A stretch of 62,967 nucleotides of DNA, the filler included, from Octopus bimaculoides (Eukaryota), in NCBI RefSeq assembly GCF_001194135.2. It is 8 parts of 8 records of this genome, joined end to end, with 100 filler letters (N's around TTAATTAATTAA, not from the genome) between each part and the next. Parts side by side here need not be neighbours in the genome. Positions count along the whole stretch, not along the records: positions 21,638 to 44,891 come from NC_069008.1; 7 more parts are not named here. One strand, given 5' to 3'. The position numbers and the translations under genes were made by a program. Below, piece by piece: positions 30,873 through 31,300 of the stretch. Each line of letters starts with the position of its first letter. Within the stretch, counting starts at the first letter, position 1. Below the pieces are notes generated by a model, which ran no database searches, was not told the DNA's origin, and saw nothing but the letters and a program-made list of their open reading frames with translations.

Positions 30873-31300
30873 AGAATATCACATGTAATTGGCATCAAAG
30901 CATTATTTCCATCAGATAACATCATCAATATTCATCACCTTTTAAAGACTGAAAGAAAATATTGTACAGAAGAGATTTAAGAACTCCAGAGAATTCCAGT
31001 GAAATATTTCTTCTCAACTGAGACTGATTGCAACGCTTCTCTTGTGAAATGTTTGGAATGTCTTCAAGATTATTTTGTACTGAAGTTAAACTTGGATAAT
31101 TTTAAAAGGAATCTCAGAGTATTTTCAGATATCAAAAAGGATTACAGTTGATGGAAAGGAAGCTGTAGCAGTATTTGTTAGGAATAATCTGTACGACAAG
31201 AACAAAATCTATATCCACATATGTTGTGGTGATTGAAGTAAGATAATGGACAAACTGATTATATAGGACTAGTTGAAGAATACATTTTTATTCCAGAGAG
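30873..31300 (+). promoter_or_regulatory. Splice acceptor and long 5' leader of ZNF copy 1
   Basis: ttctcttatttcag acceptor; homologous to 35991-36408; contains uORF 31049-31099. Confidence 0.6.

What the first reader, a model, noticed from the sequence alone, without database searches (positions are those of the whole stretch)
30919..31101. 183-nt leader block 182/183 identical between diverged ZNF paralogs
Seen: 30919-31101 and 36035-36217 differ at one base (31020 G vs 36136 A), whereas the first 60 coding nt differ at 9 positions and the neighbouring intron and downstream leader carry many substitutions and indels. A non-coding segment better conserved than the CDS is unexpected. Inference: a shared cis-regulatory RNA element that co-regulates the cluster (translation control, RNA structure, protein or small-RNA site), or a recent gene-conversion tract. 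Candidate for an undescribed regulatory system of the octopus ZNF expansion.
Basis: partly seen in the sequence, partly recalled or inferred. Interest (0 to 1): 0.75.

Follow-up and report, generated by a model that had tools for sequence, protein, structure and literature searches.

The report
Gene-conversion patch in octopus ZNF leaders
Two neighbouring octopus zinc-finger genes share a nearly identical 183-base non-coding stretch, most likely because one copy recently overwrote the other (gene conversion), not because it is a special regulatory element.

Summary
Window 30919-31101 and 36035-36217 are 182/183 identical (only 31020 G versus 36136 A). The flanks are old: intron end 63%, downstream leader 76% with indels, CDS 80% with dS about 0.55.

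The block lies about 45 nt inside the non-coding leader of the single ZNF coding exon, after a conserved splice acceptor. This leader belongs to the whole family. A profile of it finds more than 20 copies upstream of ZNF reading frames in about 175 kb from O. sinensis, O. vulgaris and another O. bimaculoides chromosome.

In 17 other copies the block-equivalent is only 55-69% identical to A and carries many indels, less conserved than the CDS. It has no stable fold (z +1.6 and +1.9), no consensus structure across 19 homologues, no Rfam match, no conserved uORF and no dispersed copies.

From outgroup rates about 33 differences are expected and 1 is seen (P about 1e-13). The edges are sharp on both sides. 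That is the signature of a recent ectopic gene-conversion tract.

The same mosaic recurs in an O. sinensis gene pair and between B and inverted gene C. An assembly artefact and lineage-restricted constraint remain untested, because no orthologous loci or reads were available. Interest is low.

The parts
30919..31101 (+). Near-identical block, copy in ZNF gene A (putative conversion tract)
   Evidence: 182/183 identical to 36035-36217. Bounded by a mismatch at 30918 and an indel at 31101/31102.
36035..36217 (+). Near-identical block, copy in ZNF gene B
30811..30874 (+). Conserved intron 3' end of gene A: branch-point-like TCTTAGACTGTTGTT, polypyrimidine tract and TTTCAG(AG) acceptor
   Evidence: Aligns with the same motif upstream of about 20 ZNF genes. 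Two NCBI O. sinensis gene models splice exactly into the homologous acceptor.
30875..31300 (+). Non-coding leader of gene A's coding exon (family-wide leader; contains the block)
   Evidence: Stops in all three frames. nhmmer profile hit 30831-31298, E 2e-109. Six uATGs.
35991..36408 (+). Non-coding leader of gene B's coding exon
   Evidence: Profile hit 35949-36393, E 6e-104. Thirteen uATGs.
31301..32248 (+). ZNF gene A CDS, 315 aa, 11 C2H2 fingers
36409..37608 (+). ZNF gene B CDS, 399 aa, 14 C2H2 fingers
38561..39673 (-). ZNF gene C, an inverted paralogue whose 5' end is lost in N gap 39674-39773. It is a mosaic relative to B.
   Evidence: Tracts of 258 nt and 193 nt at 96% identity or more, inside an alignment of 83-86% overall. 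No leader copy was found for C.
31246..31266 (+). Remnant of the ancestral start codon (ATGGACAAACTGATTATATAG), now closed by a stop
   Evidence: Homologous to the ATG of the long N-terminal form (MENELY.., MESELC.., MANVFC..) in other paralogues.

Best explanation
The block is a recent ectopic (non-allelic) gene-conversion tract of about 183 bp between two old tandem ZNF paralogues that lie 5.1 kb apart on the same strand of Octopus bimaculoides chromosome CM046628.1. Both genes inherited a family-wide gene unit: intron 3' end, conserved acceptor, about 430 nt of non-coding leader, then the finger array. They then diverged to dS about 0.55. Later a short heteroduplex or repair event copied the leader segment of one gene into the other and reset its divergence to about 0.5%. 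What is shown: the identity pattern, the sharp edges, the old flanks, the absence of special conservation of this segment elsewhere in the family, and the recurrence of such mosaics. What is inferred: the recombination event itself, and that the tract is tolerated because it lies in non-coding leader, whereas exchanges in the specificity-determining fingers would be selected against.
For: (1) The flanks are old. A-B dS is 0.53-0.59, the downstream leader has d = 0.29 and the intron d = 0.51, while the block has d = 0.0055.
(2) Slow evolution does not explain it. Against 6 outgroup paralogues the block is 56-67% identical, the downstream leader 46-57% and the CDS 68-74%. Against 17 copies the block is 55-69%. 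The outgroup rate ratio of 0.72 predicts about 33 differences in 183 nt, and 1 is seen, Poisson P = 1e-13.
(3) Both edges are sharp. The 89% identity of the left shoulder (30872-30918) matches what that segment's slower family-wide rate predicts, and the right side falls to background at once.
(4) It is an internal patch with diverged sequence on both sides. That requires conversion or a double exchange, not a single unequal crossover.
(5) Similar mosaics occur elsewhere. In O. sinensis, L004 9572-10022 versus 19114-19570 has the leader at 94-100% but the CDS at 81% (dS 0.42). B versus C has tracts of 258 and 193 nt at 96% or more within 83-86% overall.
(6) Nothing functional was detected: fold z +1.6 and +1.9, 0 consensus pairs in 19 homologues, no Rfam match, and stops in every frame.
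Against: No orthologous A or B loci from another species could be obtained, so the classical tree-incongruence test was not done. I could not see the rest of this cluster, because the loci are masked to the window piece. Further local copies might share the block. The O. bimaculoides assembly is gap-rich, and read support for both copies was not checked. Leaders being more similar than the CDS in 2 of 4 close paralogue pairs could also point to selection for leader homogeneity.
Confidence: 0.7

Rival explanations
1. Assembly artefact. In this short-read, gap-rich assembly the block of one paralogue was filled or closed with reads from the other, so the near-identity is not in the genome.
For: The piece contains 12 N runs. 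One 10-N gap at 30579-30588 has the same 38 nt duplicated on both sides. That gap lies about 340 nt upstream of the A block, and the N run 35117-35689 ends about 345 nt upstream of the B block. The tract length of about 183 nt is on the scale of reads or gap closure.
Against: There are no Ns within 340 nt of either block. The two copies differ at one internal position (31020 / 36136), so they are not a copy-paste. The same kind of mosaic occurs in O. sinensis, whose assembly I recall, without having checked it here, to be long-read based.
Confidence: 0.12
2. Functional element under very strong purifying selection, restricted to the A/B lineage. It could be a protein or small-RNA binding platform, or a translational control sequence in the 5' leader.
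For: Across the family the block is slightly better conserved than the downstream leader (outgroup JC distance 0.53 versus 0.74), and several motifs reach 70% or more column conservation. A 16-codon uORF lies in the block in both genes. Leader similarity exceeds CDS similarity in a second pair.
Against: It would need near-absolute constraint on 183 contiguous bases with abrupt edges, while the same segment in 17 other family members is 55-69% identical with indels of 13-50 columns. There is no structure. The first ATG of the uORF is not conserved in other paralogues. In the O. sinensis pair the near-identical tract covers a different part of the leader, mostly the 135 nt just before the ATG. 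That fits random tract placement better than one fixed element.
Confidence: 0.1
3. Structured regulatory RNA, small-RNA precursor or shared transposable-element insertion.
For: None beyond the identity itself.
Against: The block folds less stably than shuffled sequence on both strands. RNAalifold gives 0 pairs. There are no Rfam hits at E up to 1. The sequence is found only at a fixed position upstream of ZNF reading frames and aligns collinearly with other leaders, so it is not an insertion.
Confidence: 0.03

Closest known systems
Ectopic (interlocus) gene conversion in tandem multigene families, for example mammalian KRAB-ZNF clusters, PRDM9 finger arrays and globins. Homogenisation by gene conversion has been proposed for cephalopod protocadherin clusters (PMC9068888).
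   Same: A short internal tract of near-identity between nearby paralogues in the same orientation, with much older flanks. The tract length lies in the usual range of tens to hundreds of bp. Other mosaics occur in the same cluster.
   Different: The visible tract lies in the non-coding leader, not in the repeated finger array. No orthologue-based tree incongruence could be shown. As far as the papers I read go, it is not described for octopus ZNFs (PMC12513265 has no mention of UTR, exon, intron or conversion).
Conserved 5'-UTR cis-regulatory elements (IRE-like stem-loops, regulatory uORFs, IRES-like leaders)
   Same: Location in a long leader rich in uATGs, upstream of the main ORF.
   Different: No structure, no covariation, no conserved uORF and no conservation above the CDS across the family.
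Ultraconserved non-coding elements
   Same: More than 99% identity over nearly 200 nt of non-coding sequence.
   Different: Ultraconservation is defined between orthologues of distant species. Here the identity is between two paralogues within one genome, and the homologous segment in other species' paralogues is about 60-69% identical.

Membership tests
Ectopic gene-conversion tract | Paralogous loci whose flanking sequence shows much older divergence | tested here: met
   dS 0.53-0.59, downstream leader d 0.29 and intron d 0.51, against block d 0.0055.
Ectopic gene-conversion tract | A discrete tract whose low divergence is not explained by site-rate heterogeneity | tested here: met
   Outgroup-calibrated expectation of 33 differences against 1 observed, P = 1e-13. 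Permutation maximum 83 against 183 observed. Block identity to 17 other copies is 55-69%.
Ectopic gene-conversion tract | An internal patch with diverged sequence on both sides, with plausible length and proximity | tested here: met
   183 nt, sharp edges at 30918/30919 and 31101/31102, copies 5.1 kb apart on the same strand.
Ectopic gene-conversion tract | Phylogenetic incongruence: the tract groups paralogues within a species while the flanks group orthologues across species | not testable with these tools
   No orthologue of A or B was retrievable. Protein searches found none, and no DNA search of octopus genomes is available.
Ectopic gene-conversion tract | Both copies verified by independent reads | not testable with these tools
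   No read data. Only one assembly carries these genes.
Structured cis-regulatory RNA element | Folding energy better than shuffled sequence | tested here: not met
   z = +1.61 on the + strand and +1.86 on the - strand.
Structured cis-regulatory RNA element | Conserved structure or covariation among homologues | tested here: not met
   RNAalifold on 19 homologues gives 0 pairs and 0 kcal/mol.
Structured cis-regulatory RNA element | Match to a curated RNA family | tested here: not met
   No Rfam hit at E up to 1 in 30300-32400.
Family-wide conserved regulatory sequence of the ZNF expansion | Higher conservation than neighbouring leader and CDS across many family members and species | tested here: not met
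   Block 56-67%, CDS 68-74% and downstream leader 46-57% against outgroups. The block is only modestly better conserved than the downstream leader.
Transposable-element or dispersed-repeat copy | Copies at unrelated genomic positions | tested here: not met
   All profile hits lie directly upstream of ZNF reading frames. There are only 2 copies in the piece.

The most novel reading that the evidence does not exclude
Leader homogenisation is not neutral noise. It could be a recurrent, selectively favoured concerted evolution of a family-wide leader exon. Octopus ZNF coding exons all begin with a conserved acceptor plus a leader of about 430 nt rich in uATGs. Annotated O. sinensis models splice from inside one ZNF gene into the next gene's leader acceptor. 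Neighbouring genes in two species keep leaders far more alike than their coding sequences. Together these could mean that cluster neighbours are expressed through shared or chained transcription units, and that leader identity is maintained for common post-transcriptional control.
Probability: 0.1. Interest if true: 0.55.

Novelty: new member of a known kind. Interest (0 to 1): 0.2.

Why it matters
If this reading is right, the finding is a routine footprint of sequence exchange between tandem paralogues. It says little about how the octopus ZNF expansion is regulated. Its practical use is as a caution: near-identity between paralogous non-coding segments in these clusters should not be read as constraint. 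Two by-products are modestly useful for annotation and for dating duplications in cephalopod ZNF clusters. One is the shared gene unit across three Octopus species (conserved acceptor, long leader, degenerate ancestral start codon). The other is the recurrence of mosaics.

Tried and rejected
- **Full-length protein A search.** It was flooded by vertebrate ZNFs and returned no octopus hit, so it was useless.
- **N-terminal profile search.** It returned only proteins of 160 aa or less, apparently because of a length filter. These gave entry points to octopus loci but no orthologue.
- **Protein B with framework residues masked as X.** This kept only the specificity helices. It produced 44 candidates and no close relative, so the collection holds no annotated orthologue.
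- **Exact look-up of A and B.** Neither protein is in the protein collection.
- **JGI metagenome scan for a 25-mer of the block.** No hits.
- **Reaching the neighbouring annotated LSM-domain gene as a synteny anchor.** L001 and L002 are masked to the window piece, so this was impossible.
- **ENA contig L009.** It is only 586 bp, a metagenome node from a different ZNF gene, and says nothing about splicing.
- **Coding potential of the block.** Rejected: stops in all frames, and the longest ORF differs in length between A and B because of the indel at 31101/31102.
- **Hairpin or small-RNA precursor.** Rejected.
- **Single unequal crossover.** Rejected, because the block is an internal patch.
- **Positive selection inflating CDS divergence.** Rejected as the sole cause, because synonymous divergence is itself about 0.55.
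- **Albertin et al. 2015.** The octopus genome paper is not held. Statements about it rest on my own knowledge.

Full report
**Source and layout.** The piece is Octopus bimaculoides GCA_001194135.2, chromosome record CM046628.1, at about 16.39-16.42 Mb. It is gap-rich, with 12 N runs. It carries three C2H2 zinc-finger genes:
- Gene A: CDS 31301-32248, + strand, 315 aa, 11 fingers.
- Gene B: CDS 36409-37608, + strand, 399 aa, 14 fingers.
- Gene C: an inverted gene on the - strand, 38561 to beyond 39673, whose 5' end is lost in an N gap.

**Observation.** 30919-31101 and 36035-36217 differ at a single base, 31020 G versus 36136 A. The first 60 coding nt differ at 9 positions. Identity by segment in a MAFFT alignment of the two upstream regions:

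| Segment (gene A coordinates) | A-B identity |
|---|---|
| 3' end of the intron | about 58-63% |
| 30872-30918 | 87-89% |
| Block, 30919-31101 | 99.5% |
| 31102-31300 | 72-76%, with a 10-nt indel |
| CDS | 80-81% |

The block occurs only twice in the piece. In 20,000 permutations of the 84 differences over 496 non-coding columns, the longest stretch with at most one difference was 83 columns, against 183 observed.

**Anatomy.** Just upstream of both blocks lies a polypyrimidine tract ending in TTTCAG. The sequence from there to the ATG has stops in all frames. So the block sits about 45 nt inside the non-coding leader of the same exon that carries the whole finger array.

This leader is not specific to A and B. 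BLAST, a multiple alignment and an nhmmer profile find the acceptor-plus-leader unit directly upstream of ZNF reading frames. The loci searched were two from O. sinensis (L003, L004), two from O. vulgaris (L005, L008) and two from another O. bimaculoides chromosome, CM046629.1 (L006, L007). That makes more than 20 copies in about 175 kb.

Two NCBI gene models in O. sinensis (P0207 and P0180) end by splicing exactly into this conserved acceptor, so annotation treats it as a real splice site.

Many paralogues start translation at an upstream ATG, giving an N-terminal peptide of about 35 aa (MENELY.., MESELC..). In A (31246) and B (36361/36364) that ATG survives but is followed by a stop. Both genes instead use an internal Met.

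**Is the block constrained?** Region by region against six more distant paralogues:

| Segment | Identity of A or B to outgroup paralogues |
|---|---|
| Block | 56-67% |
| Downstream leader | 46-57% |
| CDS | 68-74% |

Against 17 other leader copies the block-equivalent is 55-69% identical to A, with 16-55 gap columns. So across the family this segment evolves like ordinary non-coding DNA, only modestly slower than the rest of the leader (JC distance ratio 0.72).

Scaling the A-B distance of the downstream leader (0.29) by that ratio predicts about 33 differences in 183 nt. One is seen, Poisson P about 1e-13.

The A-B synonymous distance is 0.53-0.59. The diverged CDS therefore reflects age, not only positive selection on the fingers.

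The 89% identity of the left shoulder (30872-30918) is what that segment's slower family-wide rate predicts. The right side drops to background immediately. Both edges of the tract are therefore sharp.

**RNA-level tests.**
- The block folds less stably than dinucleotide shuffles on both strands, z +1.61 and +1.86.
- RNAalifold on 19 homologues predicts no base pair at all.
- Rfam gives nothing at E up to 1.
- The 16-codon uORF inside the block is not conserved in other paralogues.
- The sequence is found only at a fixed position in the gene unit, so it is not a transposable-element insertion.

**Other mosaics.**
- In O. sinensis, the adjacent genes at L004:10001 and L004:19549 have leaders 94-100% identical, including 135 nt at 100% just before the ATG. 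Their CDS is 81% identical (dS 0.42) and the upstream sequence cannot be aligned.
- In the window, B and inverted gene C share tracts of 258 and 193 nt at 96% or more, inside alignments of 83-86%.
- Two other close pairs are uniformly diverged, at 93%/94% and 80%/81% for leader/CDS.

Sequence exchange between neighbouring ZNF paralogues is therefore common, and tract positions vary. That fits conversion better than one fixed functional element.

**Conclusion.** The best explanation is a recent ectopic gene-conversion tract of about 183 bp between two old tandem paralogues (confidence about 0.7). It is probably tolerated because it lies in the leader.

Two rivals remain open. An assembly artefact (about 0.12) cannot be excluded without reads. 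The single internal difference and the comparable mosaic in another species' assembly argue against it. Strong constraint restricted to the A/B lineage (about 0.1) cannot be excluded without orthologues.

I could not retrieve orthologues. The three protein searches found none, the exact proteins are not in the collection, and no tool searches octopus genomes by DNA.

**Literature.** A 2025 analysis of cephalopod C2H2 expansions does not mention UTRs, exons, introns or conversion (PMC12513265). It notes that paralogues often fall in different expression modules, which does not suggest a shared regulatory leader. The chromosome-scale cephalopod genome paper invokes gene conversion only for protocadherins (PMC9068888).

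**Verdict.** It is a new instance of a known process, and interest is low. The family-wide leader unit and its recurrent homogenisation are the only aspects that might merit a follow-up.

Noticed in passing
window 30811-31300 and 35927-36408; L003-L008 (for example L004 27877-27430 on the - strand, L005 3720-3257 on the - strand, L006 30822-30405 on the - strand): Octopus ZNF genes in three species share one gene unit: a conserved branch-point-like motif, a polypyrimidine tract, a TTTCAG acceptor, and about 430 nt of non-coding leader before the finger array. There are more than 20 copies in about 175 kb. The papers I read do not mention it.
   Followed up: yes
L004 9572-10022 versus 19114-19570 (O. 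sinensis CM016888.1): A second pair of adjacent ZNF genes has the leader 94-100% identical (135 nt at 100%) but the CDS only 81% identical (dS 0.42), with unalignable upstream sequence.
   Followed up: yes
window 36830-37427 versus 39609-38826 (- strand): Gene B and the inverted gene C are mosaics. Tracts of 258 and 193 nt at 96% identity or more sit within 83-86% overall, with a two-finger offset. Gene C's 5' end and leader are missing behind the N gap at 39674-39773, next to a SINE-like repeat.
   Followed up: partly
window 31246-31266 and 36361-36399: A conserved upstream ATG is the start codon of a longer N-terminal form in other paralogues. In A and B it is followed by a stop, so both genes use an internal Met. 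The leaders carry many uATGs, 6 in A and 13 in B.
   Followed up: partly
L004 19160-19168; L003 18250-18360: Two NCBI O. sinensis gene models (P0207, P0180) splice from inside one ZNF coding exon into the leader acceptor of the next ZNF gene. This suggests read-through or chained transcripts between neighbours, or annotation artefacts.
   Followed up: partly
window 30541-30626: The same 38 nt (TCGGCCCGAGGCTGTAGTAGAAGACACTTGCCCAAGGT, part of a SINE-like repeat also seen near 26357-26421, 38041-38112 and 39776-39823) is duplicated on both sides of a 10-N gap. This looks like a gap-closure artefact.
   Followed up: no
window 42196-42684 (+); 23273-23720 (+); 44574-44891 (-): Fragments of mobile elements. 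One ORF has a Pif1 helicase 2B domain (E 5e-16), which is Helitron-like. One ORF has a CCHC zinc knuckle, which is gag-like. One ORF resembles, by eye, the C-terminus of a LINE reverse transcriptase, but it has no Pfam hit.
   Followed up: partly
window 26400-26800: A long low-complexity TG/TA/CA-rich microsatellite-like region flanks N gaps.
   Followed up: no
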